From positions 10,106,001 to 10,170,000 of the forward strand of contig NC_043018.1 of assembly GCF_006345805.1 (NCBI RefSeq): DNA of 64,000 nt, in the 5' to 3' direction. The DNA is from Octopus sinensis. Its lineage: Eukaryota. Below, piece after piece: positions 8,920 to 59,131 of this stretch. Numbering within the stretch: position 1 is the first letter of the stretch; every line of letters starts with the position of its first letter. The translations under genes were made by a program, and so were the position numbers. The notes below the pieces were generated by a model, which worked only from the letters and a program-made list of their open reading frames with translations, was not told where the DNA came from and did not search any database.

Positions 8920-9045
8920 GTGCAGCCGGACTTAGAGGAGCTGCAAATGAATATGGAAGAGAATGAAGATGCTGAAAGTACAAAATCTGAAGTAAAATTA
9001 GGGAAACTCCAATATTCAATGGACTACGATTTTCAGAAAGGCGAG
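8920..9045 (+). CDS. Syt1: Syt1 linker/C2A-start exon (VQPDLEELQMNMEENEDAESTKSEVKLGKLQYSMDYDFQKGE); alternative start at 8926
   Basis: Acceptors ccaag|GTG (8920) and gtgcag|CCG (8926); donor GAG|gtaagc at 9046; 126 nt, phase 0/0; KLGKLQYSMDYDF is the canonical C2A first strand. Confidence 0.96.
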
Positions 9046-9415: not shown

Positions 9416-9820
9416 TAGGCGCAGGAGTGGCTGTGTGGTAAGTAGCTTGCTTACCAACCACATGGTTCCGGGTTCAGTCCCACTGTGTGGCACCTTGGGC
9501 AAGTGTCTTCTACTATAGCCTCGGGCCGACCAAAGCATTGTGAGTGGATTTGGTAGACAGAAACTGAAAGAAGCCCGTCATATATATGTATGTGTGTGTG
9601 TATGTGTTTGTGTGTCTGTGTTCGTCCCCCCAACATCACTTGACAAACGATGCTGGTGTGTTTACATCCCTATAACTTAGCGGTTCAGCAAAAAGAGACC
9701 AATAGAATAAGTACTAAGCTTACAAAGAATAAGTCCTTGGGTCGATTTGCTTGACTAAAGGCGGTGCTCCAGCATGGCCGCAGTCAAATGACTGAAACAA
9801 GTAAAAGAGTAAAGAGACAA
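9416..9820 (+). mobile_element. tRNA-derived SINE family A, full length
   Basis: A-box-like tggctgtgtggtaag, B-box-like ggttcagtccc, internal (TA/TG)n, tail gcggtgctccagcatggccgcagtcaaatgactgaaacaagtaaaagag. Confidence 0.85.
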
Positions 9821-12479
9821 AAGACATGAGCAGATCAAAAATGTGGTCAGATAATATTCATTGCCTTTGTTGGTCACACTTTTGAGTCTCGATCCAAAAT
9901 GTGATGATGGCTGCTTCTGTTAGGACCCTAGGGATGAGGTACTAGAGGAACCCATCCCTACGACCCTCCCAGGAGCAGTGAGCAGAGAAAATGGATAGAT
10001 GGATGGATGGCTTTCCTTTTGTTAGAGATAGTCTTTGTTTTGTGGTATAGTCTTCAAGTTTAAAGCTGCAAGCTAGCAGAATTGTTGGCTCGCCAGGCAT
10101 TTCACCTGTCTACAGGTTCTGAGTTCAAATTCTGCTGAAGTCGACCTTGCCTTTCATCTTTTGAGGTCAATAAAATAAGTACCAGTTGCATACTAGTGTT
10201 GATGTAATCAACTTACCCAGCTCCACCAAAATTGCTGGCCTTGTGCCAAAATTTGATATCAATATATTCTTCCAGTTTATCAAAATCTTTGTACCGGAGA
10301 GATGGTCTTGTAATAGATTCCAGTTCCCAAAATATTTTAAATTTGAGAGATGGTTTTCTAACTGACGTGAGGTCTAGGGATCGACCAAAGATGAGATGGT
10401 TGGATAATGTCCCCAGTTTCAGTGAGTCCCACTTGGGAACCCAGCTTGAAAGCCTAATGCTGCTTACTTCTGGTAGAACCCTATGGAGAAGGTACTGAAG
10501 GAACCAATCCTTCCCTCCTCAACACACGACCCTCTCATAAATAGTGAGTGGGAAAAATCGATGGATGGATGGTTTTCCTTTCATGAGAGATTCCACAGTT
10601 ACCAAAATATTTTATATTTGGGAGATGGTCTTATATTTGTGACAGATTCAAGTTTTGTCCTAAGGGAGTAAAACATCATCATTGTCATTTTAACATCTAC
10701 TTTTCCATGCTTGTATGGGTCAGACAGAATTCATTGTGTTAGATTATCAAGGGCTGGATGCTCTTCCTGTCACCAACCCTCACTTGGTTCCAGACATGCA
10801 ACTTGCATGACCAGCATCAGTCTCCTGGTTCCCCCTACCAAATTCTTGTTTTACTTTGTCGTGGGGTTTTTAGCCCACTAATATAATATAATGTTCGGTC
10901 GGATGAGTTGTTAGGGCAATAGACAACGTGCCAAACGAAATACCAAATGTGAATGTTCTGAGTTCAAACCTTGCTGAAGTCAACTCTACATTCACCCTTT
11001 TGGGGTTTGATAAAATAAAGTAGAAGACAAGTACTGCAATCGGTTTGAACAATTAATAACCCCTGATCCCAAACTTGTGCTTATTTTAGAAGGTATTCAA
11101 ATATACCCCTTGTTAAGGTACCGGAGATCTTGTTAACACTGGATTGTTTAACTGATCCCCTATCAAGTTGGGTAACCTTAAATAGGCAGTACTTTCTGAA
11201 GTACTTTCTACAGTTCCCAAAAGTGATATCTTTTGCAATTTCATAATGCTGGGGCAAATTCCAATTGTGTGAAAGTGTTTCTGAAGTCCTTGGGCCCATT
11301 TGCTTGACTAAAGGCGGTGCTCCAGCATGGCCACAGTCAAATGACTGAAACAAGTAAAAGAGTAAAGAGACAAAAGACATGAGCAGATCAAAAACGATGT
11401 GGTCAGATAATATTCATTGTCTTTGTTGGTCACACTTTTGAATCTCGATCCAAAATGTGATGATGGCTGCTTCTGTTAGGACCCTAAGGATGAGGTGCTA
11501 GAGGAACCCATCCCTACGACCCTCCCAGGAGTAGTGAGCAGAGAAAATGGATAGATGGATGGATGGCTTTCCTTTTGTCAGAGATTCCAGTTACCAAATG
11601 CTCCAACCACAGTTAGTGCCACTCCTGCTTTCACATTCCACATTCTTCCTGTATCTATTATTATTATTGAGTGAGAGAGCAGCACATGCCATCAAAGTGA
11701 CACTAGGGTACAAATAAATGAAGCCCAATATACCCGTCATGGCTACATATCTGATAAGGGCACACCAGGCACATGCATCACAACTGTATGTGAGCAACAT
11801 GGTGATCTCATATCAAGATAAACAGTGCATGACTTTGCAGGTGGGGCCCAGTTAGAATTTTCTTCAGATCGAGTAACCCATCCCGCTCAAAAGGTCCCTG
11901 AATAAGGGTTGTTTAAGGACGTTGAATGAAACACCCATGTTTCCAGAGGTGAATTATTCAAACCCCAAAGAATCCTTCTCAACACATGGCTATGATGCTC
12001 CCCCACTACTTCTGCTCGTGATCAGAGATGCACTTATCGTCAACCACTAAGGGACATGCTCAACTTGTTAAGGTCAAACAACTGACAAGCAAATCTGTGG
12101 TATTGAGCAGAATATTTGCTGTAGCCCATCTTTTATACCAAGACAAAACAATGTACATGATAACACTTCCAATACCAGTATTTGGTATTGCATTATTATT
12201 ATTATTTTATTTTTAAAGCTGTGTCCTGGCAAAATCGTTAGCATGGCAGGTGAAATGCTTAGCGGTATTTCGTCTGTCTTTACGCTCTGAGTTCAAATTC
12301 TGCCAAGGTTGACTTTTCCTTTCATCCTTTCATGGTCGTTAAATTAAGTACCAGTCAAGTACTGGGGTCGATGTAATCGACTTACCACTCCCCCCAAATT
12401 TCAGGCCTTGTGCCTATAGTAGAAAGAATTATTATTATTATCATTATTATTATTCAGTAGTCTTATTATTATCACATGC

Positions 12480-12862
12480 TCTCATTGAACTACTAAGCAC
12501 AGCTCTGTGTGCCTTGGGTATGCGCCGTGGTTTGTTTTGGCGCTCTTACTTTTACTGTATTGAAAGTGTTTTACGTAGGATATGCACGGTGCCTAGTAGT
12601 GCTATTTTCTGTATGTTATATATATTCGTAAGTCCTGGTGTTTTGGTTAGGTATTTGCCTGTATGTTTTTTAATCATACATAATGCACCATTATTATAGG
12701 GATTGTTTCAGTTTTAGGCTCCACATTCATGTTACTGCTATTTCCAGCTCTTTGTATTTTGAGGGTTTTCTGTTTCTGTTAGAGATACACTGTCATCTGT
12801 TGGGATTCATACATTGATTAGAAGACATTTTTTTTGTTGATGATCTCTAACTATACCTGGTC
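12480..12862 (-). mobile_element. Decayed 3' end of an RLE-type (R4/Dong-like) non-LTR retrotransposon
   Basis: Minus-strand translation with stops/frameshifts: RPGIV..DHQQKKCLLINV*IPTDDSVS...SKYKELEIAVT*MWSLKTETIPII.GAL.MIKK...IQKIALLGTVHILRKTL; flanked by (TTA)n. Confidence 0.7.
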
Positions 12863-13124
12863 TATTATTATTATTATTATTCTATGTTTGACTTTTGCTT
12901 TACATTTGAACAAGTTGGCTCCAAGTCTCACCCAGAGACCTCAAGAGACAACAGGTTGGAAGTTCATGTTGTTGTTATGCCTAGTGTGCCATATATTTGG
13001 TTTTGTATTTAGTGTTGTCCTAGTGAATGTCTAAAAGAATACCATACGAAAATTATGTTTGTTTTAAAACTTGAGATTACATAGAAAGTATTTTGCGTAG
13101 GATATTATTATTATTATTATTATT

Positions 13125-14056
13125 ATTTAAGGTGGTGAGCCAGCAGAATTAATAGGATGCTGGTTGAAATGCCTAGTGGTATTTTGTCTGCCACTACATT
13201 CTGAATTCAAATTCCACTGAGGTCAACTTTGCCTTTCATACTTTTGGGGCTGATAAAATAAGGACCAGCGAAACACTGGGGTTGATGTAATTGATTAACC
13301 CCTTCCCCCAAATTTCAGGCCTTGTATCTATTGTAGAAAGGATTACCATTATTATTATGTAACTTATGGTGTAATTATAAACAGGGCAAATTTTAGCCAT
13401 TTCTCAGCAGACTGAAAAAAATTATGAACAACCTTAATCAAGTTAATCAACTTTCAAACCTAATTGAGTTCTCATCAGATGCGTCTACATCATTCTGACA
13501 GTCTCCAGAGCAACATGCAGCTAAACTGTTTGTATACTCCACAAATGCAGCAGTTACTCTGTGAAGGAGTCCCTAATTTACATACCAAAAGTGTTTAACA
13601 CTCTATAAATACCAGCGGCCTGTCAACAGGGATCTTAGTCCACACAAAAGTTGCTAAGAGCTTATTCAATTTACAGGGATATTATCTTGAGGTTTGGTGA
13701 TAACAAGTCTCCTTAAATTTCAAGAATATTTCTAAGGATTCACGTAGAATACAGGACTGCAATTTTCTACAGTTTGAGAAAATGTGTCTCAGTTCCAATA
13801 TCCTTCAGCCTCTCGGGTAGCAGTCTGGGTATGTGCCAAGTGCACCAACTATCACAGGAACAATTGTCACCTTTATCTTTCACAATTTCTTCTCCTCTCT
13901 GGCTAGGTCCTCCTATTTCTCAATTTCTTTATTATTATTCCAGGGTTGACTTTGCCTTTTAGGGTCAATAAAGAAAGTACCAGTGATACACTGGGGTTGA
14001 TGCAATTGACTAGCCCCTTCCCCAAAATTTCAGACCTTGTGCCTTTAGTAGAAAGG

Positions 14057-14087
<31 letters not shown>

Positions 14088-14385
14088 TATTATTATTATT
14101 TCTGACATTGACTCATCTTTTGGAGTCGATAAAATAAGTACCAGTTGAGTACAGGGGTCAATTTAATTGACTTACACCCACTCCCAAAATTGCCGGCCCT
14201 GTGCCGAAATTTGAAAAAGGCATCATTATTATTTTTATTATTCCATGATCAACTTTGATTTTCATCATTTTGGGGTCAATAAAATAAGTACCAGTTGAAT
14301 ACTGGGGTCGAGGTAATTGACTTATCTCCTCCACCCCACTGAAAGTGCTGGCCTTGTGCCAAAATTTGAAACCATTATTATTGCA
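13125..14385 (+). mobile_element. Cluster of older, truncated family-B-like SINEs separated by (TTA)n
   Basis: Repeated tttgcctttcat..ttttggggtcgataaaataagtaccag..ctggggt.gat..aattgact...aaatttcaggccttgt cores. Confidence 0.7.
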
Positions 14386-14420
14386 GTTGTTGCATTTTTT
14401 ATGTGATTTTTACATATTCT

Positions 14421-14550
14421 TTGTACCAATTCTCAAATTGTGCCAATTCTCAAATTGTACCAATTCTCAAATTGTACCAATTCTCAAATTGTACCAATTC
14501 TCAAATTGTACCAATTCTCAAATTGTACCAATTCTCAAATTGTACCAATT
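14421..14550. repeat. 17-bp minisatellite (ttgtaccaattctcaaa), about 7.6 copies
   Basis: Near-perfect tandem units read directly. Confidence 0.95.
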
Positions 14551-15087
14551 CAAACAACAAGAAGCAATCCAATAATGTTTCACCCATCGGAAGAACCAGA
14601 ATGTGGACTCTTCCAGACTATTCCACTGTCACAGAAAGGGAATTGCTCATTAGGCCACCATTTCATTTTGATGTCTTTGATCAGGTCAAATCCCAAGCAG
14701 CATAAAAGAACCAAAAAACAGAAATGCCAAATGTCATGCCATAACCATTCCTCACAGCTAATGTCATGGTTTTTAGAAAACAGGACATTCCTTGTCGCCA
14801 TGGATACAAGAAAATACCAAATGCTTGGCATTTTGAGATGATGTTAATGAAAGAGTTCTTGATAATCAGGAGATGTATGAAGTTAGAGATATTTTCATTA
14901 AAAGGGTGTGTGGTAAAAAATTTACTTCCCAACTGCAGGGTCCCAGGTTCAGTCCTACTGCATGGCACCTTGGGCAAATGTCTTCTACTACAGCCTTGGT
15001 TTGACCAAAGCCATATTAGTGGATTTGATAGAAGAAGCTGAAAGAAGCCTATTGTATATACATACATTATATATATATAATATATAT

Positions 15088-15120
<33 letters not shown>

Positions 15121-15141
15121 GGGTGTGTGTGTGTGTATACA

Positions 15142-15363
15142 CAGTAATCCCTCGACTATCACAGGTGTTACATTCGAAAACCCCTGCAATAGGTGAAAAT
15201 CCACGAAGTAGAAATAGTACTGTACTGTATACTTTTTAAAATTATTTTTATAATTTGTATATATTTATTTTATTATAAATGCAAAACAACACCACGGAGG
15301 AATCGACATAAGCTTAAATAATAAACTGCGATAGGTGACCCACAATATGACGAGGGATTACTG
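15142..15363. mobile_element. Tc1/mariner-pogo (Tigger-like) MITE
   Basis: Perfect 13-bp TIRs cagtaatccctcg (15142-15154) / cgagggattactg (15351-15363); TA on the right flank. Confidence 0.7.
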
Positions 15364-15371
15364 TAATATAT

Positions 15372-15785
15372 CATCATCATCATTTAGCGTCCGCTTTCCA
15401 TGCTAGCATGGGTTGGACGGTTCAACTGGGGTCTGTGAAGTCAGAAGGCTGCATCAGGCCCAGTCTGATCTGGCAGTGTTTCTACGGCTGGATGCCCTTC
15501 CTAACGCCAACCACTCCGTGAGTGTAGTGGGTGCTTTTTACGTGCCACCCGCACAGGTGCCAGACGGAGCTGGCAAACGGTCACGGACGGATGGTGCTTT
15601 TTACGTGCCACCGGCACAGGGGCCAGGCGAGGCTGGCAACAGCCACGAACGGATGGTGCTTTTACGTGCCACCGGCATGAGGCCAGTTGGGGCGGCGCTG
15701 GCAACGGACACGAATGGATGGTGGTGCCAGACGAGTCTGGCAAACGGCCACAAATGGATGCTGCCTTTTACGTGCCACCGGCATA
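15372..15785 (-). mobile_element. SINE-like family C
   Basis: Same core, tail and internal subrepeats as 6245-6585. Confidence 0.75.
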
Positions 15786-15939
15786 TAAAAATATAAAAGA
15801 AGCAAAAATAGTTGAGATTCAGTATTCACCACGTGGCAAAATTATGAATTGAAAATATGTGGAAAACATAAAAAGTGGAAGAGAAATGCTTTCGTTTCAT
15901 TTCTCTTCCACTTTTTATGTTTTCCACATATTTTCAACC

Positions 15940-16551
15940 TATATTGCTCTCAGCTATGGTCACCAACCAGTGTCAAATTAATCACAGAACTTGAGGCAAT
16001 CCAACGAAGCTACACGAAGAAGATAGCCTCTGTGCAGCATATAAGCTATTGGGAACGACTCAAGAGATTAAGACTCTATTCCTTAGAGTGTAGGCAAGAA
16101 AGATGTGTCATAATATACATCTGGAAGATCCTGGAAGAACTTGTCCCAAACTTTGGCATCGAGAGTTACACAAATACAAGAACTGGGTGCCACTGCATAG
16201 TGCCAAGGACTCCAAATTTGCCATCAAGATGTAGGACAAGATACTGTGATAGCCTGGGCTTCAGAGGTCCACAGCTCTTCAATATCCTCCCGAAGGACCT
16301 GAGAGACCTGCATGGGGTGGATGCAGATGTCTTTCAAATAAAGCTGGACCTCTTCCTGTCAGGTGTCCCAGACGAACCAACTTCACGGCAGGAGGTGCAG
16401 ATGAGGGCAGCTGCATCAAACTGTCTCATGCACCAAATGGCAATTGCTAAAAAGCATTCGTGAAGTAAAATCATGTAGCAACACCGAATGGCGGTGCCCC
16501 AGCATGGCCACAACTCGTGAGCTGAAACTAGATAAAATCAAAATCAAAATC
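15940..16551 (+). mobile_element. 5'-truncated CR1/L2-group LINE (ORF2 C-terminus plus 3' tail)
   Basis: LWSP...LEAIQRSYTKKI....SYWERLKRLRLYSLECRQER..IIYIWKIL...GPQLFNILP; ends in gcggtgccccagcatggcc...(aaatc)n. Confidence 0.85.
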
Positions 16552-16743
16552 ATATATATATATACACACACACACACACAAATTTCCAGAATTCAAGAGA
16601 ATTAGGTATTTGAACAGTAAAGCACCAATGTCAGGTTGGTGATTGCATTATTATGTACAAACAATGTTTAACAACAAAAACATAGTAAACATGGATTTGT
16701 ACTCTAGTGGTGCATGCAATCACAAATGGCTGCCTGTGTGTGT

Positions 16744-16799
<56 letters not shown>

Positions 16800-16987
16800 G
16801 GATAAGATCGCTAATTTAAATATCGATCTCATCAAGTGGCCAGCGTGGCGGTATCTCTTAGGTATCTTAAATTATAATTTTATACATATATATATATATA
16901 TATATATAATAAAATATTAGGGAATAAATCCAAACTTACAGGGAAAAATCAGATTTAGGATTGAATCCAATTTTATAGTAAAATATT

Positions 16988-17236
16988 ATATTATATTAAA
17001 TTAGAGATAAAACCACTATTAGGCAAATCAAACAATGAAAAACTTAAGCCAATACATAAGATTAATTAATTTATATTATTTTAAATATATATCAAAAGTA
17101 TTAAAAATTTATTAAGTTTTTAATACTTTTGATATATATTTAAAATAATATAAATTAATTAATTTTATGTATTGGCTTAAGTTTTTCATTGTTTGATTTG
17201 CCTAATAGTGGTTTTATCTCTAATTTAATATAATAT
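16988..17236. repeat. Near-perfect palindrome, ~120-bp arms, 9-nt spacer
   Basis: 16988-17107 vs 17117-17236 are reverse complements; I found 1 mismatch. Confidence 0.9.
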
Positions 17237-17239
17237 ATA

Positions 17240-17270
<31 letters not shown>

Positions 17271-17370
17271 CGTAAAATATATAGGGTGGTGAATATTTTT
17301 AGAAATTTCACCACCAGTGGCCTAGCATGTATAAAAAGTCAATAGACAACATATTCTCAATATAAAATAT

Positions 17371-17547
17371 TGTACATTTAAACACAAGAGAAAACTACCT
17401 TTAACAGGTAATTTTTACATGCTACAATAACCAGTCAAAATGACTTCGAAAATTGCTCTTAAATCTGGTTTTGGTTGTTTTGACTGTTTCTTCTAGCATG
17501 TAAAAATTACCTGTTAAAGGTAGTTTTCTCTTGTGTTTAAATGTACA
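17371..17547. repeat. Inverted repeat, 54-bp perfect arms, ~70-nt spacer
   Basis: tgtacatttaaacacaagagaaaactacctttaacaggtaatttttacatgcta and its reverse complement at 17494-17547. Confidence 0.9.
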
Positions 17548-17548
17548 C

Positions 17549-17612
<64 letters not shown>

Positions 17613-18199
17613 GCATGTGCATATGCCTTTGTGTTTGTATTTGTCCCCCACCAGACTTCGTTCTTTAGAACCCTATAACTTAGGGGTTTGGCAGAAGATA
17701 CCAATAGAATGAGTACCAGGGTTCGTTTTTCCTTTTTCTTTTCTATTTTTTGTTTACATTGTTTTGGACTTGACCTGATCAGAGAGATATCATAATGAAA
17801 TGAGGGCTTCATGAGCAACCCCACTTTCTGTAACGATAAAATAGTCTGGAATTGTCCAAATTGTAGTTCATTCGGTGCTTGAAGCATCATTGGATTTCTT
17901 TTTCTCGTTTGAAGATTTCTTTAACTAAAACCCTTCCAGGTGACATCCCAGCTTGAATGCAGTTTAATGATTGAAATGAATAAAAGATAAAAAGATAGAA
18001 GCTAAGATATTGTATCAATGGTTAAACAATCACTCTGGACGGATTGATTGATTGATTGATTCTCGCGACAAGAGTAACTTGGGATACTCCACATCCAAAA
18101 CAAATCAGAGAGGAGTATCAGCATTATCTTCTATCTTTATTTTTTACTTGTTTCAGTCATCGGACTGTGGCCATGCTGGGGCACCGCCTTATGTTGATA

Positions 18200-18926
18200 A
18201 TATTCCTATAATATTCCTTTCATTTTGTATTTTCTCTCTCTCTTACTCTCCTTACCTCTCTTGCTCCCTTGCTCCATCCATCCCTTTCTCTCCCTCCCTC
18301 CCTCTCTGTCTTTCCTTCCCTCCTGCCCTCTATCCATCACTTCTCTCCCTCTCTCCTACTTTCTCTCTCTCTCTCTCCATTCCTCACTTCTTTCTCTCTC
18401 TCACTCTCCACCTCTCCTGCTTTCTCTATCTATCTCTATCTCCCTCTTTTTCCACCTTCTCTATCCCTTTCCCTTTCTCTTTCCACAGTCTACCTCTCAC
18501 CACTCCTCAGCTCAGCCTCAGCTAACAACTCTCTCTCTCTCACTCCCTCTTTTTCCACCTTCTCTGTCTCTTTCCCTTTCCCTTTTCACAGTCTACCTCT
18601 CACCACCCCTCAGCTCAGCCTCAGCTAACAACTCTCTCTCTCTCTCTCCCTCTTTTTCCACCTTCTCTATCCTTTTCCCTTTCCACAGTCTACCTCTCAC
18701 CACCCCTCAGCTCAGCCTCAGCTAACAACTCTCTCTCTCCATTCCTCACTCTTTCTCTCTCTCACTCTCACCTCTCCTGCTTTCTCTATCTCTCTCTCTC
18801 TCTCCCTCCCTCTTTTTCCACCTTCTCTGTCCCTTTCCCTTTCTCTTTCCACAGTCTACCTCTCACCACCCCTCAGCTCAGCCTCAGCTAACAACTCTCT
18901 CTCTCTCCCTCTTCTCTCTTCTCCAG
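18200..18926 (+). repeat. CT-rich compound repeat with four copies of ccacagtctacctctcaccacccctcagctcagcctcagctaacaac
   Basis: Copies begin near 18483, 18587, 18683 and 18849, directly upstream of the C2A exon acceptor. Confidence 0.9.
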
Positions 18927-19094
18927 CTAACAGTAAATGTAATACAGGCTGCCGACCTACCTGGGATGGATATGTCTGGGACGTCTGACCCATACGTCAA
19001 AGTCTATCTAATGCCCGACAAAAAGAAGAAATTTGAAACAAAAGTCCATCGGAAAACACTGAATCCAGTATTTAATGAATCCTTCACATTTAAG
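18927..19094 (+). CDS. Syt1: Syt1 C2A exon ([56 protein letters not shown])
   Basis: Long CT tract and ctccag| acceptor; donor AAG|gtaagt at 19095; 168 nt open frame; missed by the ORF track (no ATG-led ORF of sufficient length). Confidence 0.97.
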
Positions 19095-19144
19095 GTAAGT
19101 CACATCCACTGACCGTCACAGTAATCGGTAACCATAGCAACTGC

Positions 19145-19555
19145 GGCGAGCTGGCAGAAACGTTAGCACGCCGAGCGAAATGCGTAGCCGTATTTCGTCT
19201 GCCGTTACGTTCTGAGTTCAAATTCCGCCAAGGTCAACTTTGCCTTTCATCCTTTCAGGGTCGATAAATTAAGTACCAGTTACGCACTGGGGTCGATATA
19301 ATCGACTTCATCCGTTTGTCTGTCCTTGTTTGTCCTCTCTGTATTTAGCCCCTTGTGGGTAGTAAAGAAATAGGTATTTCGTCTGATTTACGTTCTGAGT
19401 TCAAATTCCACTGAGGTCGACTTTGCCTTTCATCCTTTCGGGGTCGATAAATTAAGTACCAGTTACGCACTGGGGTCGATGTAATCGACTTAATACCTAT
19501 GTCTGTCCTTGTTTGTCCCCTCTGTGTTTAGCCCCTTGTGGGTAATAAAGAAATA
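19145..19555 (+). mobile_element. Dimeric family-B SINE with 18-bp target-site duplication
   Basis: Full unit followed by a 5'-truncated second unit; TSD ggtaac(c/t)atagcaactgc at 19127-19144 and 19556-19573. Confidence 0.85.
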
Positions 19556-20639
19556 GGTAACTATAGCAACTGCAGTAACAACACTAACCATATCAGTCAA
19601 AGTAGCCATAGTAACAACAGTTAGCATAGTAACCACTGTAACCATGGTAACTGCAGTAACCACAGTAACTATTGTAGCCGTAGTAACTACAGCCTGTAAC
19701 ATCATCATGGCCATCATCATTAATTTCATCATCATCATCATCCAACCAATCGCAACCACTCAGGATTCACAGAGTGATCGACTCCTCCACCCTTCGATCA
19801 TTCATTGCCACTTTGATGGCAATTCCTGAGTTGCATGCAGTCACATCTAGGAAGGAGAATGCTCTTCCTGTCAGCCTCCGCAAGAGGAGAGATGAAATGA
19901 TCCCTCTCTATCTGCTCGATAACAGAGACCATCCAATTCTAGATGTTTCTGGCCTAGACACACAGATACCAGCTTCAACTTCCCATATATTTGTTGTGAA
20001 GGAGGTTGCTAACCTCATACAACAACAGCAGGATGTTACATCAGTGTGTAACATTAGTATGTAACATCGGTAGGTAACATCAGTGTGTAAGAACAGTATG
20101 TAACAACAATATATAATAATATCAGTATGTAACAATATTTAACATCAGTTTGTAACAAAGCATATAACATCATGTAATTTGAGTTGTAATCTCATAGAGT
20201 AACCATGCTCAGTAACCACAATATAGAAGTAGATGTAAAATGTGACCTCATGTAACAACCAGAGAATGTAACCCAGTTTCTAACCTCAGACAGTAACAAC
20301 ACTTTGTGACTACAGACACTAGTCACAGTCTGTATATCTTTATAATAATCACAGCTGGTAAGTCATACAATAGTCCCAGTCTCATGTAATAACCTCAGAC
20401 CATGGTTACAGAATGTACCCTCATATGGTACCGACAGTCAACAATACCATTTTGTAACTACAGTCTGTAGTCAAAGTCTGTCACAACATTCAGTGACTAC
20501 AATCAGCAAACACAGAATGTAACCTGATGCAATAACCACAGTCTGTACCCTGATAATGTAACCAGGGTATATAACCATGGTATGTAATCTCATACAGTAC
20601 AAACTCTCTGTAAATAATACAGTAATAATATAATATATA

Positions 20640-22766: not shown

Positions 22767-22943
22767 AACGTACCTTATGCTGATATTACGGGTAAGACGC
22801 TAATATTTGCGATCTACGATTTTGATCGCTTTTCAAAGCATGACCAAATTGGTCAAGTCCAAGTTCCAATGAATTCTATAGATCTTGGATCAGTAATTGA
22901 AGAATGGAGGGATCTCACCAGTCCTGATAATGATGCTGAGAAA
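22767..22943 (+). CDS. Syt1: Syt1 C2A exon (NVPYADITGKTLIFAIYDFDRFSKHDQIGQVQVPMNSIDLGSVIEEWRDLTSPDNDAEK)
   Basis: ttgcag| acceptor; AAA|gtaagt donor at 22944; Ca2+-binding loop 3 motif YDFDRFSKHD. Confidence 0.97.
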
Positions 22944-23496
22944 GTAAGTTTTGGTTTTTTTTTACTTCCACACATCATATTTTTATTTATCATTTGTATA
23001 TTTAATTAGTGAATTAACAAATTATCTGTATTAATAAAGTAAGTTCAGTGTGTGTGTATATTTGTGAGTGTACATGTTCATATGTAAGGGTGTGTGTGTG
23101 TTTATGAGTGTGTGTGTGTGTGTGCATGTGTGTATGCAATGTTCATATATTTAGTGTGTGTAGTAAGTGTATATGTCCATGAGCATAGTGCATGTGTGTT
23201 GGTGGGTGAGTGTGTATGTGTGTGTATCTGTGTGTGTGTATTTGTGTATGTGTGTGCTCAATTGTGTTTTATCCTTTAGTCATGAGGGAGAGCTGTGCCC
23301 AAGACTCTTCACTTGCTCTCCCTTCTTTAAAAATGGCAATGTGGCATTTGACAGACATTCGGCCAAACAGTGAGTATAAAGTTAAAAAAATATAACCAAA
23401 AACCAAAAAAAAAAATTTTTTTAAATGACCAAATCTACTTTAAGCTTTCAGTTGTGTTCAATAGATGACCTGTGGTCAAACTTTTTTATTTTATAG

Positions 23497-23762
<266 letters not shown>

Positions 23763-29726: not shown

Positions 29727-30135
29727 AGCGCAGGAGTGGCTGTGTGGTAAGTAGCTTGCTTACCAACCACATGGTTCCGGGTTCATTCCCACTGTGTGGC
29801 ACCTTAGGCAAGTGTCTTCTACTATAGCCTCGGGCCGACCAAAGCCTTGTGAGTGGATTTGGTAGACAGAAACTGGAAGAAGCCCGTCGTATATATGTAT
29901 ATGTATGTGTGTATATGTTTGTGCATCTGTGTTTGTCCCCTCACCATTGCTTGACAACCAATGTTGGTGTGTTTACGTCCCCGTAACTTAGCGGTTCAGC
30001 AAAAGAGACATAGAATAAGTACTAGGCTTGTAAAGAATAAGTCCTGGGATTGATTTACTCGACTAGAAGGCGGTGCTCCAGCATGGCCGAAGTCAAATGA
30101 CTAAAACAAGTAAAAGAGAAAAGAGAAAGAGAACA
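29727..30135 (+). mobile_element. SINE family A, full length
   Basis: gcgcaggagtggctgtgtggtaagtagc...ggcggtgctccagcatggccgaagtcaaatgactaaaacaagtaaaagag. Confidence 0.85.
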
Positions 30136-31132: not shown

Positions 31133-31266
31133 ATCCCTACGTCAAAATAACTTTATATCTGGGAAATAAACGACTGAAAAAGAAGAAGACAACCATTAAG
31201 AAACATACTTTGAATCCTTACTTCAATGAATCTTTCACATTTGAAGTTTCTTTTGAACAAATACAG
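31133..31266 (+). CDS. Syt1: Syt1 C2B alternative exon 1 ([45 protein letters not shown])
   Basis: Polypyrimidine tract + accag| acceptor; CAG|gtattt donor; 134 nt, open, phase 1/0, paralogous to 32630-32763; not in the ORF track. Confidence 0.9.
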
Positions 31267-31539
31267 GTATTTTCGTTGGGAGATCTTCAGCTGCGTCTTT
31301 TCAAGACGTCTCGCTGACTTTGGGGCTCTTACCTTGTTTCCAATGGCTTGCCATATTTGCTACATCCTTCAGCTACAAGCTCAGACTTTGTTCACATTCT
31401 TCACGATTATTCTAATCCATTTTCTTCAGCATTATTTCTTCATCGACAAATGTAGAAATCTGAACATAAAGAATTCCTTCTTTGAAACAGACTCGTTAAC
31501 GTGTCAAGTGATGAAAAATGTTACAATGACAATGATGAT

Positions 31540-32629: not shown

Positions 32630-32763
32630 ATCCTTATGTTAAGATATCTCTGATGCTAAACGGTAAAAGAATTAAGAAGAAGAAAACCACTATCAAGAAA
32701 TGTACACTGAATCCATACTACAATGAATCATTTGCGTTTGAAGTCCCCTTTGAACAAATACAG
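32630..32763 (+). CDS. Syt1: Syt1 C2B alternative exon 2 ([45 protein letters not shown])
   Basis: tctag| acceptor; CAG|gtataa donor; 134 nt, phase 1/0; polylysine motif. Confidence 0.95.
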
Positions 32764-33610
32764 GTATAAACCCTTGTCTCCCCCCCACCCCCGTCCCAAT
32801 CACCACCAATGTCTACATTACGTCTCCTTCCTCCCCCCCAGGCCCCCAACTGTTTACCTTGATTGTCATGTGATTGTAGTAGAAGTAGTAGTAGTAGTAG
32901 TAGCAGCAATGTCACATCTGAAAATGTTGCAAAACTCTTGGAATGTTGATGTGTTCTTTGATTACTTTTTGTGTTATTTTTCTGCCTTCTTAGAATTTTT
33001 TAAATGCATTCCAAACCATCAATATGGAAATGGTGCACACTTCAAGATGCATGGAAAAACATTATATATATAGCAGATTTCTTTCTTTTTTGTATATTAT
33101 TTTGTACCATTCTGTTTTTATAGTTTACAAAGACAAATTTAGAATATTGAAACATTTCTGAAAATTCTTTCAGGAATTAATATATTCTAAATTTATAAGT
33201 TTGTTTTAAAGTCCGTTCTACATTTTGAGTCATGTTTTTGTAGTGTTGTGTGCTTAAAATGTTGTCCTAATATTTCTGTCCCCATGTGTATAACTTAGTC
33301 CTAACAATTCTGTTCCTTCTGTGTGGAGTATACCAAACTGTCCTGTGTGTTTCACCAAAACCTTTCCCACTGTCTTACCTTTAAGGGTGAAGTTGTTTTT
33401 ATCTTTTTTTTCATGTCTTACCAGAGTACCCTGTCCTTTTTAGAGTTCATATATGGTTCTATACAGCACATATACGTTAGGGGTTTGCCTCATGATCACA
33501 TGGTCATGGGTTCTATTCCAGGTCTGGGCAGAGCATGGTGTTCTTGAGCAAGGTACTTCTTTTCATGCTGCTTCATGCGATGGCTAGAAGTATATTGAGT
33601 TCTTCATAAC

Positions 33611-38459: not shown

Positions 38460-40070
38460 ATATATAAAGACACAACTGAGAGATCTGCAACCAAGGGAAA
38501 CAATGGCACTTGTCCAGCCCCCAAAACACCTGAAGACCAAAGAGGTGTGATGTCCAAAAAAGGAAAGCACCTTAAAAGCGACAGAAAGCAAGAGGTAAAA
38601 GAAAAGAAAAAGAAAACAACAAAAACTGTTTAGAAAAAAACAGAAGAGCCCCAGCAAGAGCTACAGGGGTTTCAAGGGCAAAGGCAGGAGCATATGCAAA
38701 TTTTTTTCTGCAAGGAAACTGTTGGCATGGCGACGATGCTGCAAACTGTCGTTTTGCACATCAGAAGCCCTGCCAAATCACATGGGCCCAAGACAACAAT
38801 CCCTCCACGAGGGGGATAAAAAGAAAGAGAATAATATCAAAGAAGGAAAAATGGTGCACTGACTACTCCCGAAAGACAATATGCGGATGTAGTGCACAGT
38901 CCAAAAAGGATACTGTATGGCCCAACAAATGGCCAGCTTTACCCAGATGTGAGAAGGGCAGCAGCTGAACAGCAATCTTTTTTGTGCATGGCACAAAAAA
39001 TTGTCCAGCAGCTGACCTGGCTACAAACACAAAGCTGGAACTATACCTACCACCACCAACAGATGCAGGATGGCCAACACACACATCACAAAAATATTTC
39101 TACTGAACGTAGGAGGACTATTGCGTGGCAACTGCAAAAGGAAAATCTCGTTCCTGAGAGACCTTGCGGCATGCAATCAAGCTATATGCATGGCACTCAT
39201 AGAAACACATCTTGGACCTGATATAGGGGATGCAGAAATAAACATACCGCAATATGTTGTCATACGCTCAGATAGTAAAGAGAGGAGTCACAGTGGAGTT
39301 GCAGTGTACATCCGAGATGACCTCACGCCCCAGATCCTATTTTCATATTCAAACTCAGTGTGTAACACCCAGATTGTACACATAAGACAACTGAATACCT
39401 ATTTCTTTACTACCCACAAGGGGCTAAACACAGAGAGGACAAACAAGGACAGACAAACGGATTAAGTCGATTATATCGACCTCAGTGCGTAACTGGTACT
39501 TAATTTATCGACCCTGAAAGGATGAAAGGCAAAGTCGACCTCGGCGGAATTTGAACTCAGAACGTAACGGCAGATGAAATACAGCTACACATTTCGGCCG
39601 GCGTGCTAACGTTTCTGCCAGCTCGCTGCCTAAAGACAACTGAATATCGTCATATGTACTACATATCGCCCACCGGATGCCCCAAATCACACAGGCATAT
39701 TTGAAGACTGCCTAACAAAAATAGGAGAAGTTCTCGCCAAACTGGAACAACAGAATAGTGTATTCTTCATGGGTGACTTTAACTTCCTCAATGTGGAATG
39801 TGGAATGGTCCCAGGGATGACAGACCATCAGCAAGCACAAGCAGAATCCCTGCTCCACCCCACAGGCGCCTCTTTCAGGGAGCAAATTGTGCTGCAACCA
39901 ACAAGGGCAAATAATATACTGGATCTCTGCTTCACAAACAATATGGACATTATCCATAATGTTAAAGTGATGCCGACATTGGTCTCGGATCACAACATAA
40001 TAGAGCTGTCTATGTATGGACCAAAAGCCCCCGCATACGCACAGCCTATACGAAGCATCCACAATACATA
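38460..40070 (+). mobile_element. Decayed LINE 5' portion: CCCH zinc-finger ORF1 remnant plus APE-like endonuclease, split by a SINE
   Basis: ICKFF/LQGNCWHGDDAANCRFAHQKPC near 38695-38785 (1 frameshift); endonuclease motifs N, ETHL, R.D, GVAVY, YRPP, GDFN, PTR, LDL and SDH are in frame once 39398-39646 is excised. Confidence 0.85.
39398..39632 (-). mobile_element. Young family-B SINE nested in the LINE endonuclease
   Basis: Perfect 14-bp TSD aagacaactgaata at 39384-39397 and 39633-39646. Confidence 0.9.
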
Positions 40071-41571
40071 TATATATATATACACATATAGCAAAGAAGT
40101 TGTGTGTTGGTGAGACAATAGCACATACTGCTGTGGAGCCATTTTTGTCTTCCCCAATAACCATTTCTGCCATTGTTCGCCTGCCATCATCAAACTTAAG
40201 AAAACAGGTCTTCATGTCGTTCTACACATCCATAATAGTGGGAAGGATTTCTGTATCGTGGCTGACATTAAGCTTGCCACGAATCTTCATTGGCAATATT
40301 TTCCATCAGCTGAGCTGCACAATAGGCTGGTACCTTAACTCCGGTATGACCATCGAATATATATTTCTTTACTACCCACAAGGGGCTAAACATAGAGGGG
40401 ACAAACAAGGACAGGCAAACGGATTAAGTCGATTACATCGACCCCAGTGCGTAACTGGTACTTAATTTATCGACCCCGAAAGGATGAAAGGCAAAGTTGA
40501 CCTCAGGACTGGTCAGTAAGGCCATGCAGTAGGCCGAGAGCTGTGGGAATCCTCCATTTACACACGCCACCCCTGCGTACTGCTGAGGCCAAAACGAAGC
40601 CCATTCCCAATTCATTATGTTTTCTGTCTTGTGTGCGTCAAGAAAGTTCCCAAGACAACTTGTTCCACAAGATTCTGCACTTGATGGTGTCTGCATACAC
40701 CAGAATGCTGCTTGCTTCTCCTCTTAATTAAAAGAGACGAATCAGATTTTTAATGTTTCCACTTTATTTATTGTATATTTAGAAACTGAAGCAAGCTTTT
40801 GTTTACTTTAAAAAAAAAATAAAACGAATCTGTTATCACTGTTTTTACAAAAAGGGGGAGAAACAAAGATTAATTGGAAACACAGAAAAAACTTATTCCG
40901 TATCGAGTATAATTAAGGTTTCTTCCTCTAGTTTGTTTATCAATTTGGTCCAACGTATGAATATCAATTTGATAGGAGTGCATATGGGTGTTGAGTGTAC
41001 AAAAGCGTAAATACTGCGACAGAAAGGGCGGGAAGGCAAAAAAACGGAGGCGGCAGATATTGGAGTCTGTATGAATGCATCGTTATCTTGCAGGGTTATC
41101 ATGAAAAACACAAAACAAGGAACTCGTTAGATTAAAATAGAAACACTCTTCTTACCATTTATCAAAAGTTGTAAGTTATCGAATATAAACAACACACATT
41201 GGGATTTTATTATTACTTTTTTCCTTTCGACCTTTCGATGTGTAGTTTTTTTAAGCACAACTATTTCGTTGTCGTTTTTGAATCGCAAATAGAAGCGGGA
41301 AAATGATGGATTGTCGGAGGGATTCGCTTGCATTTAAAGATCTAGAGCTGCACGTTTGTTACTTATTTTTATATTCACAGCGAAGAAAGAATATCTCTTC
41401 CGAGATAATATCGTTTCAGTAATTTTTGTTGACGTCAAATAGTCTTAAAAGGGCGATGCAACAATGATTGTCGAAGGTAAACTTTCGGAGGTGACGGTTG
41501 TGGTATCTTCCATAACCGTTTCAATATGGCGGTACTGTGTCAGGCTTAACAAAATATATATTATCCTATCA

Positions 41572-41805
41572 AAGGCGGCGAGCTGGCAGAAACGTTAGCG
41601 CGCCGGGCGAAATGCTTAGCGGTATTTCGTCCGTCGTTACGTTCTGAGTTCAAATTCCGCCGAGGTCGACTTTGCCTTTCATCATCTCGGGATCGATAAA
41701 TAAAGTACCAGTTTCGCACTGGAGTCGATGTAATCGACTTAATCCCTTTGTCTGACCTTGTTTGTCCCCTCTACGTTTAGCCCCTTGTGGGTAATAAAGA
41801 AATAT
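41572..41805 (+). mobile_element. Young family-B SINE with 18-bp TSD
   Basis: TSD atatatattatcctatca at 41554-41571 and 41806-41823. Confidence 0.9.
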
Positions 41806-41926
41806 ATATATATTATCCTATCACTGAGTCCCTTTATTTATTGCTCTGTGTTTAGGACTTTAGCTGAATATATTATCACATGTTTGGGTTTATTTGTTGT
41901 CCTAAATTTAGGTTCATATATTGTCC

Positions 41927-49075: not shown

Positions 49076-49557
49076 ACTGTTGTGATGACAATAAGAGCGA
49101 CACTACTCCTGATAATAGTAATGATGATAAGGATAATAACGATGATGCTGATGCTGATAGTGGGGATGATGATGATGATGATGAATCCCCAAAGTTAAGA
49201 ACACAAGAATCAGAATAATAGCAATTTTCTTATTAAGCTAAACAACAGATACATTTTTATATGATTTGATTTTTGCTTTCTTGATGATGTTGCAGTTGCT
49301 GCTGTTTTGGTTTGTTTTAGGGAACACAATTCATAGAACGGAGTTGATTGCAATGAAGAATTATGATTCTGTCAGAGTACTGACCATTATTATTATTATT
49401 ATCATTAAGTTTGTTCATTTTCTTTGACCATTGATGATTGGTGTTGGTGTGTTTACATCCACCCCCATAACTTAGCAGTTCAGCAAAAGAGACTGATAGA
49501 ATAAGTACCAGCCTTAGAAATAGAACTGGGTCAATTTGTTTGATTAAAATTCTTCGA

Positions 49558-49947
49558 GGCAGCCTGTATTACATTTACTGTTAGCTGGAGAAGAGAGAAG
49601 AGGGAGAGAGAGTTGTTAGCTGAGGCTGAGCTGAGGGGTGGTGAGAGGTAGACTGTGGAAAGGGAAAGGGAAAGGGATAGAGAAGGTAGAAAAAGAGGGA
49701 GAGAGATAGAGAAAGAAATGAGGAATGGAGAGAGGGAGAAAAGTGATGGATGGAGGGCAGGAGGGAAGGAAAGACAGAGAGGGAGGGAGGCAGAGAAAGA
49801 GAAGTGATGGATGGAGCAAGGGAGCAAGAGAGGTAAGGAGAGTAAGAGAGAGGGAAAGTGCAAAAAGGAAAGGAATATTATCAACATAAGGCGGTGCCCC
49901 AGCATGGCCACAGTCTAATGACTGAGACAAGTAAAAGATAAAAGATA
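49558..49947 (-). repeat. Inverted partial copy of 18128-18953 (intron end, acceptor and first 27 nt of the C2A exon) inside a family-A SINE
   Basis: 49558-49584 is the reverse complement of exon nt 18927-18953; CT-rich tract and SINE tail are collinear with the source. Confidence 0.92.
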
Positions 49948-50656
49948 TCATGTCAACCCTTTTGTTACAATATTTCAGTTGAGATGCCCAGAGCTTCTTT
50001 CAATTATTTTAAATATAATAAAGAATTTAATAAAATAACTTAGTTATTATTAAGCTAGTGTTAAGAACATAAATTGTTTGGTGGAAGATTTTAATTCAGA
50101 ACTTTTGAAAACAAAATATTTGAAGTACAGAGCCAGAGGTGGTTTTAGGCAGGTTGGTGTCAAAAAGGTTAAATAATGAGAGAATTCATGAGGTGCAGAC
50201 AGAACAGTGAGAATCTAAGCAATAATGTATCTATTCATTCTTAAAACATTCTGCCAGATTTAAATGTTTCATGGTTGTCAATGGATACGGAAATCAAAAG
50301 AGAATATATCCTGCATTTCAGAATTCTACCTTACAGAAATTTTCAGGAATGCAATGTTTCCATGGTTTCGGGTTCACTCCCACTGTGTCGCACTTTGGGT
50401 AGGTGTCTTCCACTATAGCCCCGAGCCGGCCGGAGCTTTGTGATTGAATTCGGTAGGTGGAAGTTACTGCCGTGTGTGTATCTGTGCGTATAGCTGCTCA
50501 GTGCCTCTCCGAAAGAGAGAGAGGGAATAAGGGATACCGTAGACTATTTCTTGGTTTCAGACATTATATTTCCCAAGACATTCCGTTGTTTCATTTTCAC
50601 TAACAAAAACCTTTTTTTTTTTTTTTTCTTTTTTTCTTCTTCTTATCTTTTTACAG

Positions 50657-50842
50657 AAAGTGTCCCTTTACATCACAGTCGTTGATTACGATCGTATCGG
50701 GACGTCCGAACCTATCGGACGAACCTTCCTTGGCTGCAACTCCACTGGTACTGAATTGCGTCATTGGAGCGACATGTTGGCTAATCCTCGCCGACCAATT
50801 GCGCAATGGCATACTCTTCAAGAAGTGCCCGAGAAAAATTAG
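50657..50842 (+). CDS. Syt1: Syt1 terminal coding exon ([61 protein letters not shown])
   Basis: Long T-rich tract + ttacag| acceptor; WHxL C-terminal motif; TAG stop at 50840-50842. Confidence 0.97.
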
Positions 50843-58449: not shown

Positions 58450-58663
58450 CATAATTTTTTTCTTCTTTTACTTGTTTCAGTCATTTGACTGCGGCCATGC
58501 TGGAGCACCGCCTTTAGTCGAGCAACTCGACCCTGGGACTTATTCTTTGTAAGCCCAGTACTTATTCTATCGGTCTCTTTTGCCGAACCACTAAGTGATG
58601 GGGACGTAAACACACCAGCATCGGTTGTCAAGCGATGCTAGGGGGACAAACACAGACACACAA

Positions 58664-58698
<35 letters not shown>

Positions 58699-59131
58699 CG
58701 ATGGGCTTCTTTCAGTTTCCGTCTACCAAATCCACTCACAAGGCTTTGGTCGGCCCGAGGCTATAGCAGAAGGCACTTGCCCAAGGTGCCACGCAGTGGG
58801 ACTGAACCCAGAACCATGTGGTTGGTAAGCAAGCTACTTACCACACAGCCACTCCTGCGCCTATAAATCCATTTTTTTTTCCTTTTTATCTTTTTATCTG
58901 TTTCAGCCATCTGATTGCGGCCATGCTGGAGTACCACCATGAAGAATTTTTAGTCGAACGAATCGACCCCCACAGTTTGTTTCTTTTTAAAGCTTGGTGC
59001 TTATTCTGTCAGTGTCTTTTTTTGCTGAAGCGCTAAGTAACAGGGACGTAAACAAACCAACACCAGTTGTCAGGCATGCGAGTTTCCATAGATCTCTATT
59101 CTATGGATTAGCTCATGTTATTAGAATACTT
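58450..59131 (-). mobile_element. Family-A SINE plus adjacent older 3'-half SINE; inverted paralogue of 9148-9820
   Basis: 58858-59131 vs 9148-9420: I count 4 substitutions in ~270 nt. Confidence 0.85.

What the first reader, a model, noticed from the sequence alone, without database searches (positions are those of the whole stretch)
49558..49947. Antisense copy of the gene's own C2A splice acceptor and exon start in the last intron
A ~390-nt inverted copy of 18128-18953 (with the repeat collapsed) includes the polypyrimidine tract, the AG and exon nt 18927-18953. It interrupts a family-A SINE exactly at its ...aggc|ggtgcccc position, with 3-nt GGC microhomology on one side and SINE-tail homology on the other. 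In pre-mRNA it is complementary to the acceptor 30.6 kb upstream, so it could act as a long-range splice-masking or editing-complementary element. It also preserves the likely ancestral single-unit state of the acceptor repeat. Co-transcriptional splicing may remove its target before it is transcribed.
Basis: partly seen in the sequence, partly recalled or inferred. Interest (0 to 1): 0.72.

Follow-up and report, generated by a model that had tools for sequence, protein, structure and literature searches.

The report
Inverted splice-acceptor copy inside a SINE
A 329-base stretch from just upstream of a synaptotagmin exon, with the exon's first bases, was pasted backwards into a short mobile element (a SINE) 30 kb further along the same gene, most likely as a scar of DNA break repair with no shown role in RNA.

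Summary
The reverse complement of 49558-49947 matches 18132-18953 (blastn E 1e-108 and 1e-68). The match covers a SINE tail, the pyrimidine-rich end of the intron, the acceptor AG (18925-26) and exon bases 18927-18953. The non-SINE insert is 49561-49889 (329 nt). It splits one SINE: the SINE profile built here matches positions 2-119 on the left and 111-180 on the right. The left junction has a 3-nt GGC/GCC microhomology. The right junction lies inside 57 nt of SINE-tail homology, of which the 26 nt next to the junction are identical. Unique parts are 96-98% identical with several indels, so a simple assembly duplication is unlikely. The best explanation is a DNA break in the 49-kb SINE. The tail-side end invaded the 5'-truncated SINE tail at 18.1 kb, copied about 330 nt into the exon, and was captured by the other end through microhomology. 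The copy's single repeat unit equals the consensus of the four donor units, so an ancestral single-unit state is plausible. A very stable RNA duplex is possible on paper (net -285 to -644 kcal/mol). It spans 30.6 kb and four introns, the gene holds many other inverted repeat pairs, and no RNA data or sister genomes could be reached. Splice masking or editing guidance is therefore untested and unlikely.

The parts
18132..18188 (-). Donor side: 5'-truncated SINE tail (3' module only), which supplied the homology for strand invasion
   Evidence: nhmmer places it at model positions 112-175. Sequence. 93% identical to 49890-49947, with the 26 nt nearest the junction identical.
18189..18926 (+). Donor intron segment: about 700 nt of pyrimidine-rich sequence with repeat units U1-U4 and modules P1/P2, ending at the acceptor AG (18925-26)
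   Evidence: TRF finds a 103-nt unit x3.1 at 18429-18739. Units and modules mapped. At least 90% pyrimidine over 18230-18864.
18927..18953 (+). First 27 nt of the synaptotagmin C2A exon (LTVNVIQAA). 24 nt were copied unambiguously; GCC at 18951-53 is the microhomology
   Evidence: The exon matches C2-domain (PF00168) synaptotagmin-1 fragments.
49431..49560 (+). 5' part of the target SINE, intact up to ...TTCGAGGC
   Evidence: nhmmer model positions 2-119, E 1e-28. Alignment with other copies.
49558..49560 (.). Left junction: GGC microhomology, shared by the SINE and by the reverse complement of 18951-53
   Evidence: Read directly. The alignment ends here.
49561..49889 (-). Templated insert: antisense copy of exon bases 18927-18950, the AG, the pyrimidine tract, one repeat unit and the unique intron part
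   Evidence: It is the only long purine tract on the + strand of the window.
49890..49948 (+). 3' part of the target SINE. 49890-49915 is identical to the donor (crossover zone). Beyond that it carries the resident copy's own variants (TCTAATG, GAGAC, tail)
   Evidence: nhmmer model positions 111-180..
50667..50842 (+). Context: last coding exon, stop codon at 50840-42. Shows that the insert lies in the last coding intron of the same + strand gene

Best explanation
The insert is a scar of DNA double-strand break repair.

Shown: a complete SINE once lay at about 49431-49950, and the donor at 18.1 kb carries a 5'-truncated SINE tail in the opposite orientation.

Inferred sequence of events:
1. 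The SINE broke at or within a few bases of ...AGGC|GGTGCCCC.
2. The tail-side end, whose 3' terminus matches the donor tail at 18132-18188, invaded there.
3. It primed DNA synthesis through the intron, across the acceptor, and 24-27 nt into the C2A exon.
4. The new strand left its template. In other words, repair began by synthesis-dependent strand annealing and was finished by microhomology-mediated end joining.

The break point coincides with the end of the SINE homology. This is expected rather than odd. A break deeper in the tail would be mended cleanly and leave no trace. A break further into the SINE body would leave a non-matching flap on the invading end. A replication template switch (MMBIR) that started from the GGC side and returned through the tail homology would give the same product.

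The event is not recent: about 2-4% substitutions and several indels separate copy and donor. It most likely predates expansion of the donor repeat.

In RNA terms, the copy gives the pre-mRNA a near-perfect antisense partner for the C2A acceptor. I judge it most likely to have no effect on splicing or recoding of that exon.
For: - Donor and copy align with E 1e-108 and 1e-68. Exact junctions are seen.
- The SINE profile abuts across the insert: positions 2-119 on the left and 111-180 on the right. The left part and the outer right part share markers of one SINE subfamily, namely AAAATTCTTC.AGG, GCCCC and GAGACAAG.
- The direction donor -> copy follows from two facts. At 18.9 kb the matched sequence runs on without a break into a conserved coding exon. 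At 49.5 kb it ends inside a repeat element.
- All mismatches in the SINE tail lie beyond the first 26 nt, which fits a crossover next to the junction.
- There is no poly(A) at either end. Target-site duplications are no better than 6-nt chance matches.
- The mismatches show no A-to-G bias that would suggest an edited RNA intermediate.
- Published precedent: polymerase-theta end joining of failed strand-annealing intermediates duplicates the copied tract and leaves microhomology at the junction (PMC8654963). Synthesis-dependent microhomology-mediated end joining is described in PMC2943611.
- The copy's repeat unit equals the unit consensus.
- A second ~300-nt dispersed copy that starts inside a SINE lies nearby (9731-10029 vs 11284-11585, 96%).
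Against: - No empty site or second assembly could be found. The event, its age and whether it is fixed in the species therefore rest on this one sequence.
- The break position is inferred, not observed.
- Strand invasion and replication template switching cannot be told apart from the product.
- 'No RNA function' is a prior judgement, not a test. The duplex would be very stable, and it is the only long purine/pyrimidine pair in the window.
Confidence: 0.7

Rival explanations
1. Functional long-range RNA duplex. In the pre-mRNA, 49558-49947 pairs with 18132-18953. This would hide the branch point, pyrimidine tract, AG and first 27 exon bases, causing skipping of the 168-nt C2A exon. Alternatively it would offer ADAR a long double-stranded substrate that recodes the exon start (an editing-complementary sequence).
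For: - Predicted net duplex energy is -285 kcal/mol for the acceptor-proximal 180 nt and -644 kcal/mol overall, with 377 intermolecular pairs.
- The two arms are the only long pyrimidine and purine tracts on the + strand of the window.
- Both arms lie in one + strand transcription unit.
- The paired exon bases hold 10 adenosines, in the codons for T, N, I and Q.
- Octopus synaptotagmin C2A is reported to be recoded by editing, and insect Syt1 editing depends on intronic complementary sequences (PMC12295206; PMC5705066).
Against: - The arms are 30.6 kb apart, with four introns between them. From general knowledge, most introns are removed within minutes of synthesis of their 3' end, and removal of 9046-18926 discards all but 27 nt of the upstream arm.
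- Known editing-complementary sequences mostly lie in the same or the adjacent intron.
- The gene holds many other inverted repeat pairs of 89-95% identity, including one that starts 48 nt after the C2A donor.
- Conservation could not be checked.
- If the duplex did cause skipping, an in-frame loss of 56 C2A residues would probably be harmful.
Confidence: 0.08
2. RNA-mediated origin. A reverse transcriptase copying a SINE RNA switched, inside the tail module, to an antisense transcript of the 18-kb region. It then switched back to the SINE RNA at GGC, and the chimeric element was inserted as one unit.
For: - The shared 3' module GGCGGTGCCCCAGCATGGCC also ends a LINE fragment (reverse-transcriptase ORF 15849-16463, tail 16488-16536). 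So this module is plausibly what the reverse transcriptase recognises.
- Position ~119 of the SINE profile is a module boundary.
Against: - It needs an antisense transcript across an intron-exon border, plus two template switches.
- The second switch would have to return exactly to the base next to the point of departure. A fixed broken DNA end explains that for free.
- No clear target-site duplication surrounds the whole element.
- No other copies of the chimera exist in the window.
Confidence: 0.05
3. Assembly artefact: a chimeric read or a collapsed or misjoined repeat placed 18-kb sequence inside the 49-kb SINE.
For: Low-complexity CT/GA sequence and SINEs are hard to assemble. No independent assembly was found.
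Against: - The copy differs from the donor by about 13 substitutions, several indels and a different repeat number. A pasted duplicate would be identical.
- Both junctions are clean and continue into matching halves of one SINE with unique flanks.
Confidence: 0.05
4. Inverted repeat that drives back-splicing. Pairing of the two arms would bring the donor of the last internal exon (31269 or 32766) close to the C2A acceptor and yield a circular RNA of the C2A-C2B exons.
For: The arms lie in the introns that flank those exons, and the predicted duplex is strong. That flanking complementary intronic repeats promote circularisation is general knowledge (reviews listed).
Against: The upstream arm covers the very acceptor, pyrimidine tract and branch-point region that back-splicing would need. 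The distance is large, and competing repeat pairs exist.
Confidence: 0.04

Closest known systems
Templated insertions and duplications from strand-annealing repair finished by microhomology end joining (polymerase-theta type; also called 'coupled homologous and non-homologous repair')
   Same: There is an identifiable donor. One junction lies in extended homology and the other in 3-nt microhomology. The copied tract is a few hundred bases long. No retrotransposition marks are present (PMC8654963; PMC2943611).
   Different: The template is an ectopic, inverted, partly diverged SINE tail 30 kb away in the same gene, not the sister chromatid. The copied tract happens to include a working splice acceptor and the start of an exon. 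This is a germline-transmitted natural event, not a reporter assay.
Editing-site complementary sequences for ADAR (GluA2 Q/R intronic element; insect synaptotagmin-1 intronic elements)
   Same: An intronic sequence complementary to exon bases in a neural gene, and in insects the same gene family (PMC5705066).
   Different: Known elements are conserved and mostly lie within the same or the adjacent intron. This one is 30.6 kb and four introns away, is recent, and has no editing data. Its target arm is mostly intron.
Inverted intronic repeats (for example Alu pairs) that cause hyper-editing, exon skipping or exon circularisation
   Same: Two inverted copies in one pre-mRNA, hundreds of bases long and more than 95% complementary.
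   Different: The arms are not two transposon copies but a unique gene segment and its repair-made copy. One arm overlaps the splice signals themselves rather than lying beside them.
Long-range RNA structures in splicing control (docking and selector pairs in mutually exclusive exon clusters; conserved complementary 'boxes')
   Same: Would work by base pairing across kilobases within one pre-mRNA.
   Different: Those elements are short (tens of bases), conserved and lie beside the regulated sites. Here no conservation is known and the duplex is very long.

Membership tests
Repair-templated insertion (homologous invasion plus microhomology capture) | The inserted sequence has an identifiable donor elsewhere in the genome | tested here: met
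   18189-18953 is the donor; E 1e-108 and 1e-68.
Repair-templated insertion (homologous invasion plus microhomology capture) | The target was one continuous sequence before the event | tested here: met
   The SINE profile matches positions 2-119 on the left and 111-180 on the right of the insert, in the same orientation and the same subfamily.
Repair-templated insertion (homologous invasion plus microhomology capture) | One junction lies inside homology shared by donor and target | tested here: met
   57-nt SINE tail. The 26 nt next to the junction are identical and the mismatches lie only further out.
Repair-templated insertion (homologous invasion plus microhomology capture) | The other junction shows 1-6 nt of microhomology and no longer homology | tested here: met
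   GGC (49558-60) and GCC (18951-53). The next base differs.
Repair-templated insertion (homologous invasion plus microhomology capture) | An empty site exists in relatives or in other haplotypes | not testable with these tools
   No related genome was reachable: exact look-ups failed, the junction is absent from the metagenome contigs, and the 119 exon-matched loci all come from distant species.
Retrotransposed chimeric element | Target-site duplication around the whole unit, a poly(A) or tail-primed structure, and further copies | tested here: inconclusive
   Only 6-nt matches flank the unit. There is no poly(A) at the insert ends. There is no further copy in the window. The rest of the genome was not available.
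ADAR editing-complementary sequence | Base pairs with the exon around edited adenosines | tested here: met
   The 27 exon bases plus about 300 intron bases pair in the predicted dimer.
ADAR editing-complementary sequence | Editing is observed at the paired exon bases | not testable with these tools
   No transcript data. The primary octopus editing paper was not held.
ADAR editing-complementary sequence | Lies close enough to pair before splicing (same or adjacent intron) and is conserved | tested here: not met
   It lies 30.6 kb downstream, beyond four introns. Conservation could not be tested.
Back-splicing inverted repeats | Complementary arms lie in the flanking introns and leave the splice sites free | tested here: not met
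   The upstream arm covers the branch-point-like CTAAC, the pyrimidine tract, the AG and the exon start.
SINE with a LINE-derived 3' module (the target element) | Many dispersed copies, and a 3' module shared with a LINE 3' end | tested here: met
   At least 14 significant profile hits in 64 kb. The same GGCGGTGCCCCAGCATGGCC module follows a reverse-transcriptase ORF at 16488-16536.

The most novel reading that the evidence does not exclude
The repair-made antisense copy is a newly born long-range regulatory element of a cephalopod synaptotagmin-1 gene. In transcripts where the 9046-18926 intron is removed late, the copy would pair with the C2A acceptor. It would then either force in-frame skipping of the 168-nt exon or recruit ADAR to recode the exon's first codons (T, N, I, Q). 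Duplex stability, and therefore the outcome, could depend on temperature.
Probability: 0.05. Interest if true: 0.75.

Novelty: new member of a known kind. Interest (0 to 1): 0.3.

Why it matters
This is a clean natural example of how break repair between dispersed SINE copies can place an antisense copy of a gene's own splice signals inside the same transcription unit. That is raw material from which long-range RNA structures, editing guides or decoy sites could evolve, especially in animals with heavy ADAR activity. It also dates the expansion of the repeat in front of the C2A acceptor relative to the copy event. As it stands, nothing shows that it does anything.

Tried and rejected
**Sister-species or second-assembly test**
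- A protein search with the C2A exon found only exon fragments from distant animals. Best was 96% at protein level, about 78% at DNA level, and only exons align.
- Exact look-ups all found nothing on record. These were the two ORFs that span the junctions, the last-exon ORF and the 134-aa ORF over the upstream exon.
- The left-junction 33-mer is absent from the metagenome contigs.
- A degenerate last-exon pattern gave 119 loci. None is more than about 79% identical, and again only exons align.
- A second whole-database protein search was not run. The first showed that the database holds ORF fragments rather than annotated animal proteins.

**Retrotransposition marks**
- The target-site duplication search gave only 6-nt matches.

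**Edited-RNA intermediate**
- The donor-to-copy mismatches show no A-to-G bias: T>C x6, C>T x4, G>A x2, C>G x1.

**Full-length but decayed SINE at 18 kb**
- The MAFFT alignment hinted at one, but the profile search finds only positions 112-175.

**Known RNA families**
- No Rfam match anywhere in the window.

**Published editing sites**
- The primary octopus paper was not held, and a search for the site name found nothing. From memory only, the functionally studied I>V site is more likely the ATT codon in KHDQIGQ in the next exon (about 22.85 kb) than the ATA at 18942-44.

**Organism**
- A literature search for the SINE core sequence gave nothing relevant. 'Octopod-like' rests on my recollection of this SINE and on the large introns, not on a tool result.

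Full report
**Setting**

The window carries a synaptotagmin-1-type gene on the + strand. Coding exons were located by similarity to exon fragments from other animals and by translation:
- about 8920-9045
- the first C2A exon, 18927-19094 ([56 protein letters not shown])
- 22767-22944
- 23497-23615
- two alternative C2B exons, 31133-31267 and 32630-32764
- the last coding exon, 50667-50842, with its stop codon

The finding at 49558-49947 therefore lies in the last coding intron, 0.7-1.1 kb upstream of the last acceptor. It is 30.6 kb downstream of the C2A acceptor. The organism looks like a coleoid cephalopod. That view rests on my recollection of this SINE and on the very large introns; no tool confirmed it.

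**The observation**

The reverse complement of 49558-49947 aligns with 18132-18953 (blastn E 4e-108 and 2e-68; full alignment). The map is exact at the exon end. Source position p corresponds to 49558+(18953-p). The AG at 18925-26 corresponds to CT at 49585-86. Exon bases 18927-18950 correspond to 49584-49561.

The last ~110 donor bases before the junction are identical in the copy, apart from a 4-nt CT indel. The unique intron part is 96.1% identical with six indel events. The segment holding the last repeat unit, the acceptor and the exon start is 97.9% identical.

The match is not a low-complexity illusion. It includes non-repetitive strings such as CCACAGTCTACCTCTCACCACCCCTCAGCTCAGCCTCAGCTAACAA and the coding start. 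These two regions are also the only long pyrimidine and purine tracts on the + strand of the whole window.

**The target**

I built a profile from eight copies of the window's commonest SINE and searched the window with it. It matches:
- 49431-49555 at model positions 2-119
- 49880-49948 at model positions 111-180
- 18197-18135 (minus strand) at model positions 112-175

So one SINE at 49.4-49.95 kb is split by 329 nt of foreign sequence (49561-49889). The donor region starts with a 5'-truncated SINE tail in the opposite orientation.

The left half and the outer right half of the split SINE share the markers of one subfamily: the AAAATTCTTC.AGG insertion, GCCCC, and GAGACAAG. This supports their having been one element.

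The left junction is ...TTCGAGGC|AGCCTG. GGC is shared with the donor (reverse complement of GCC at 18951-53), and the next base differs, so this is a 3-nt microhomology.

The right junction lies in the shared tail. The 26 nt at 49890-49915 are identical in both copies, and all four tail mismatches lie further out. The switch from donor-derived to resident sequence therefore lies in that stretch. AGGC stands on both sides of the insert (49557-60 and 49889-92).

**Direction and mechanism**

At 18.9 kb the shared sequence runs straight on into a conserved coding exon. At 49.5 kb it stops inside a repeat. So 18 kb is the donor.

Evidence against an RNA route:
- There is no poly(A).
- Flanking direct repeats are no better than 6-nt matches.
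- The mismatch spectrum has no A-to-G bias that would point to an edited RNA intermediate.

The simplest account is a double-strand break in the 49-kb SINE at or next to AGGC|GGTG.
1. The tail-side 3' end pairs perfectly with the donor tail and primes synthesis through the intron into the exon.
2. The released strand has nothing in common with the other broken end, so it is captured by a 3-nt microhomology.

This 'started by homology, finished by end joining' outcome is documented experimentally. Extended ends that fail to anneal are joined by polymerase theta with microhomology, which duplicates the copied tract (PMC8654963). See also synthesis-dependent microhomology-mediated end joining (PMC2943611).

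The break coincides with the end of donor-target homology, which at first looks suspicious. It is what one expects from ascertainment (inference):
- A break deeper in the tail leaves homology on both ends and is repaired without a trace.
- A break in the SINE body leaves a non-matching flap on the invading end and would also delete SINE bases, which is not seen.

Position ~119 is also a module boundary of this SINE. Several partial hits end at 117-119 or start at 119-120. The same 3' module closes a LINE fragment at 16488-16536, just after a reverse-transcriptase ORF.

A replication template switch from the GGC side would give the same product and cannot be told apart.

**Is it an artefact?**

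Probably not. The copy differs from the donor by about 13 substitutions, several indels and a different repeat number. Both junctions continue into the matching halves of one SINE with unique flanks. No independent assembly could be found to settle this.

**The repeat**

The donor reads P1-U1-U2-U3-P2-U4-acceptor. U is about 103 nt (TRF: 3.1 copies, 91% matches). P is a ~65-nt module. The copy has a shorter P and one U.

At every site where U1-U4 differ, the copy carries the majority base, apart from one private C>T. In particular it has C where both U1 and U4 have T, so it is not a simple U1/U4 collapse.

Taking the copy as a snapshot from before the expansion needs only the expansion steps. 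The alternative needs the expansion and then at least three slippage deletions during copying.

**RNA consequences**

On paper the two arms form an enormous duplex. The predicted net energy is -285 kcal/mol for the 180 nt next to the acceptor and -644 kcal/mol overall. There are 377 intermolecular pairs, covering 18132-18402 and 18806-18953. These include the CTAAC branch-point-like motif, the pyrimidine tract, the AG and 27 exon bases with 10 adenosines.

Arguments against an effect on the exon (inference from general knowledge of co-transcriptional splicing):
- The downstream arm is made only after another 30.6 kb and four introns have been transcribed.
- Once the 9046-18926 intron is removed, only 27 nt of target remain.
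- The pre-mRNA is full of other inverted repeat pairs. Examples are 19143-19378 vs 39394-39629 (95%, starting 48 nt after the C2A donor) and 4112-4349 vs 19143-19379 (94%).

Octopus synaptotagmin C2A is reported to be recoded by editing (PMC12295206). Insect Syt1 editing uses intronic complementary sequences (PMC5705066). The idea is therefore not absurd. I could not reach the primary data, and the known I>V site is, from memory, more likely in the next exon.

If the arms do pair in some transcripts, the most likely visible result is hyper-editing of the A-rich arm at 49561-49889.

**Verdict**

The finding is real and neatly resolved structurally. It is a repair-templated, inverted, intragenic insertion into a SINE, which makes it a new member of a known kind. 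Its proposed RNA roles are untested and, in my estimate, unlikely (about 5-10%). Interest is about 0.3.

Noticed in passing
window 31133-31267 and 32630-32764: Two equal-length, about 75-80% similar C2B exons ([45 protein letters not shown] and [45 protein letters not shown]). Both start in the same codon phase. They look like a mutually exclusive exon pair.
   Followed up: partly
window 18429-18926: Each ~103-nt repeat unit in front of the C2A acceptor carries TTTCCACAG and CCTCAGCTAACAAC. The second motif matches the real junction CTCCAG|CTAACAGT at 12 of 14 bases. The intron end is therefore an array of decoy acceptor and branch-point motifs inside about 700 nt of at least 90% pyrimidine.
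   Followed up: partly
window 15849-16536: A LINE reverse-transcriptase C-terminal ORF (204 aa) is followed by GGCGGTGCCCCAGCATGGCC..., the same 3' module as the SINE. This is probably the partner LINE. Position ~119 of the SINE profile is a module boundary.
   Followed up: partly
window 9731-10029 and 11284-11585: A second small dispersed duplication: direct orientation, 96% identical, about 300 nt. It starts inside a SINE (profile position ~91) and runs 210 nt into unique flank. It may be another SINE-anchored repair copy in the intron upstream of the C2A exon.
   Followed up: partly
window 49585-49832 (+ strand): Read on the sense strand, the insert has an acceptor-like tgttag| at 49583-84 and a strong donor-like GAG|GTAAGG at 49833. 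The 248 nt between them are purine-rich. This is a possible cryptic, frame-shifting exon in the last intron. It was not tested.
   Followed up: no
window 19143-19559, 39394-39631, 41573-41809, 4110-4359, 40355-40504: A multi-copy ~240-nt repeat occurs in both orientations. Two tandem copies start 48 nt after the C2A donor, and copies 89-95% complementary to them lie in an upstream intron and in the last intron. These are strong competing partners for double-stranded RNA.
   Followed up: no
window 9148-9808 and 58464-59131: A 669-nt inverted pair, 93.7% identical, made of two SINE copies plus the sequence between them. It is either a composite repeat unit or a segmental copy. A third partial copy lies at 29728-30126.
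   Followed up: no
window 18936-18938: The exon encodes N (AAT) in LTVNVIQ where the closest fragments from other animals have G (LTVGVIQ or LSVGVIQ). Two A-to-I edits would read as GGU (Gly). This is noted only as a lead. The position is variable in more distant synaptotagmins (from memory).
   Followed up: no
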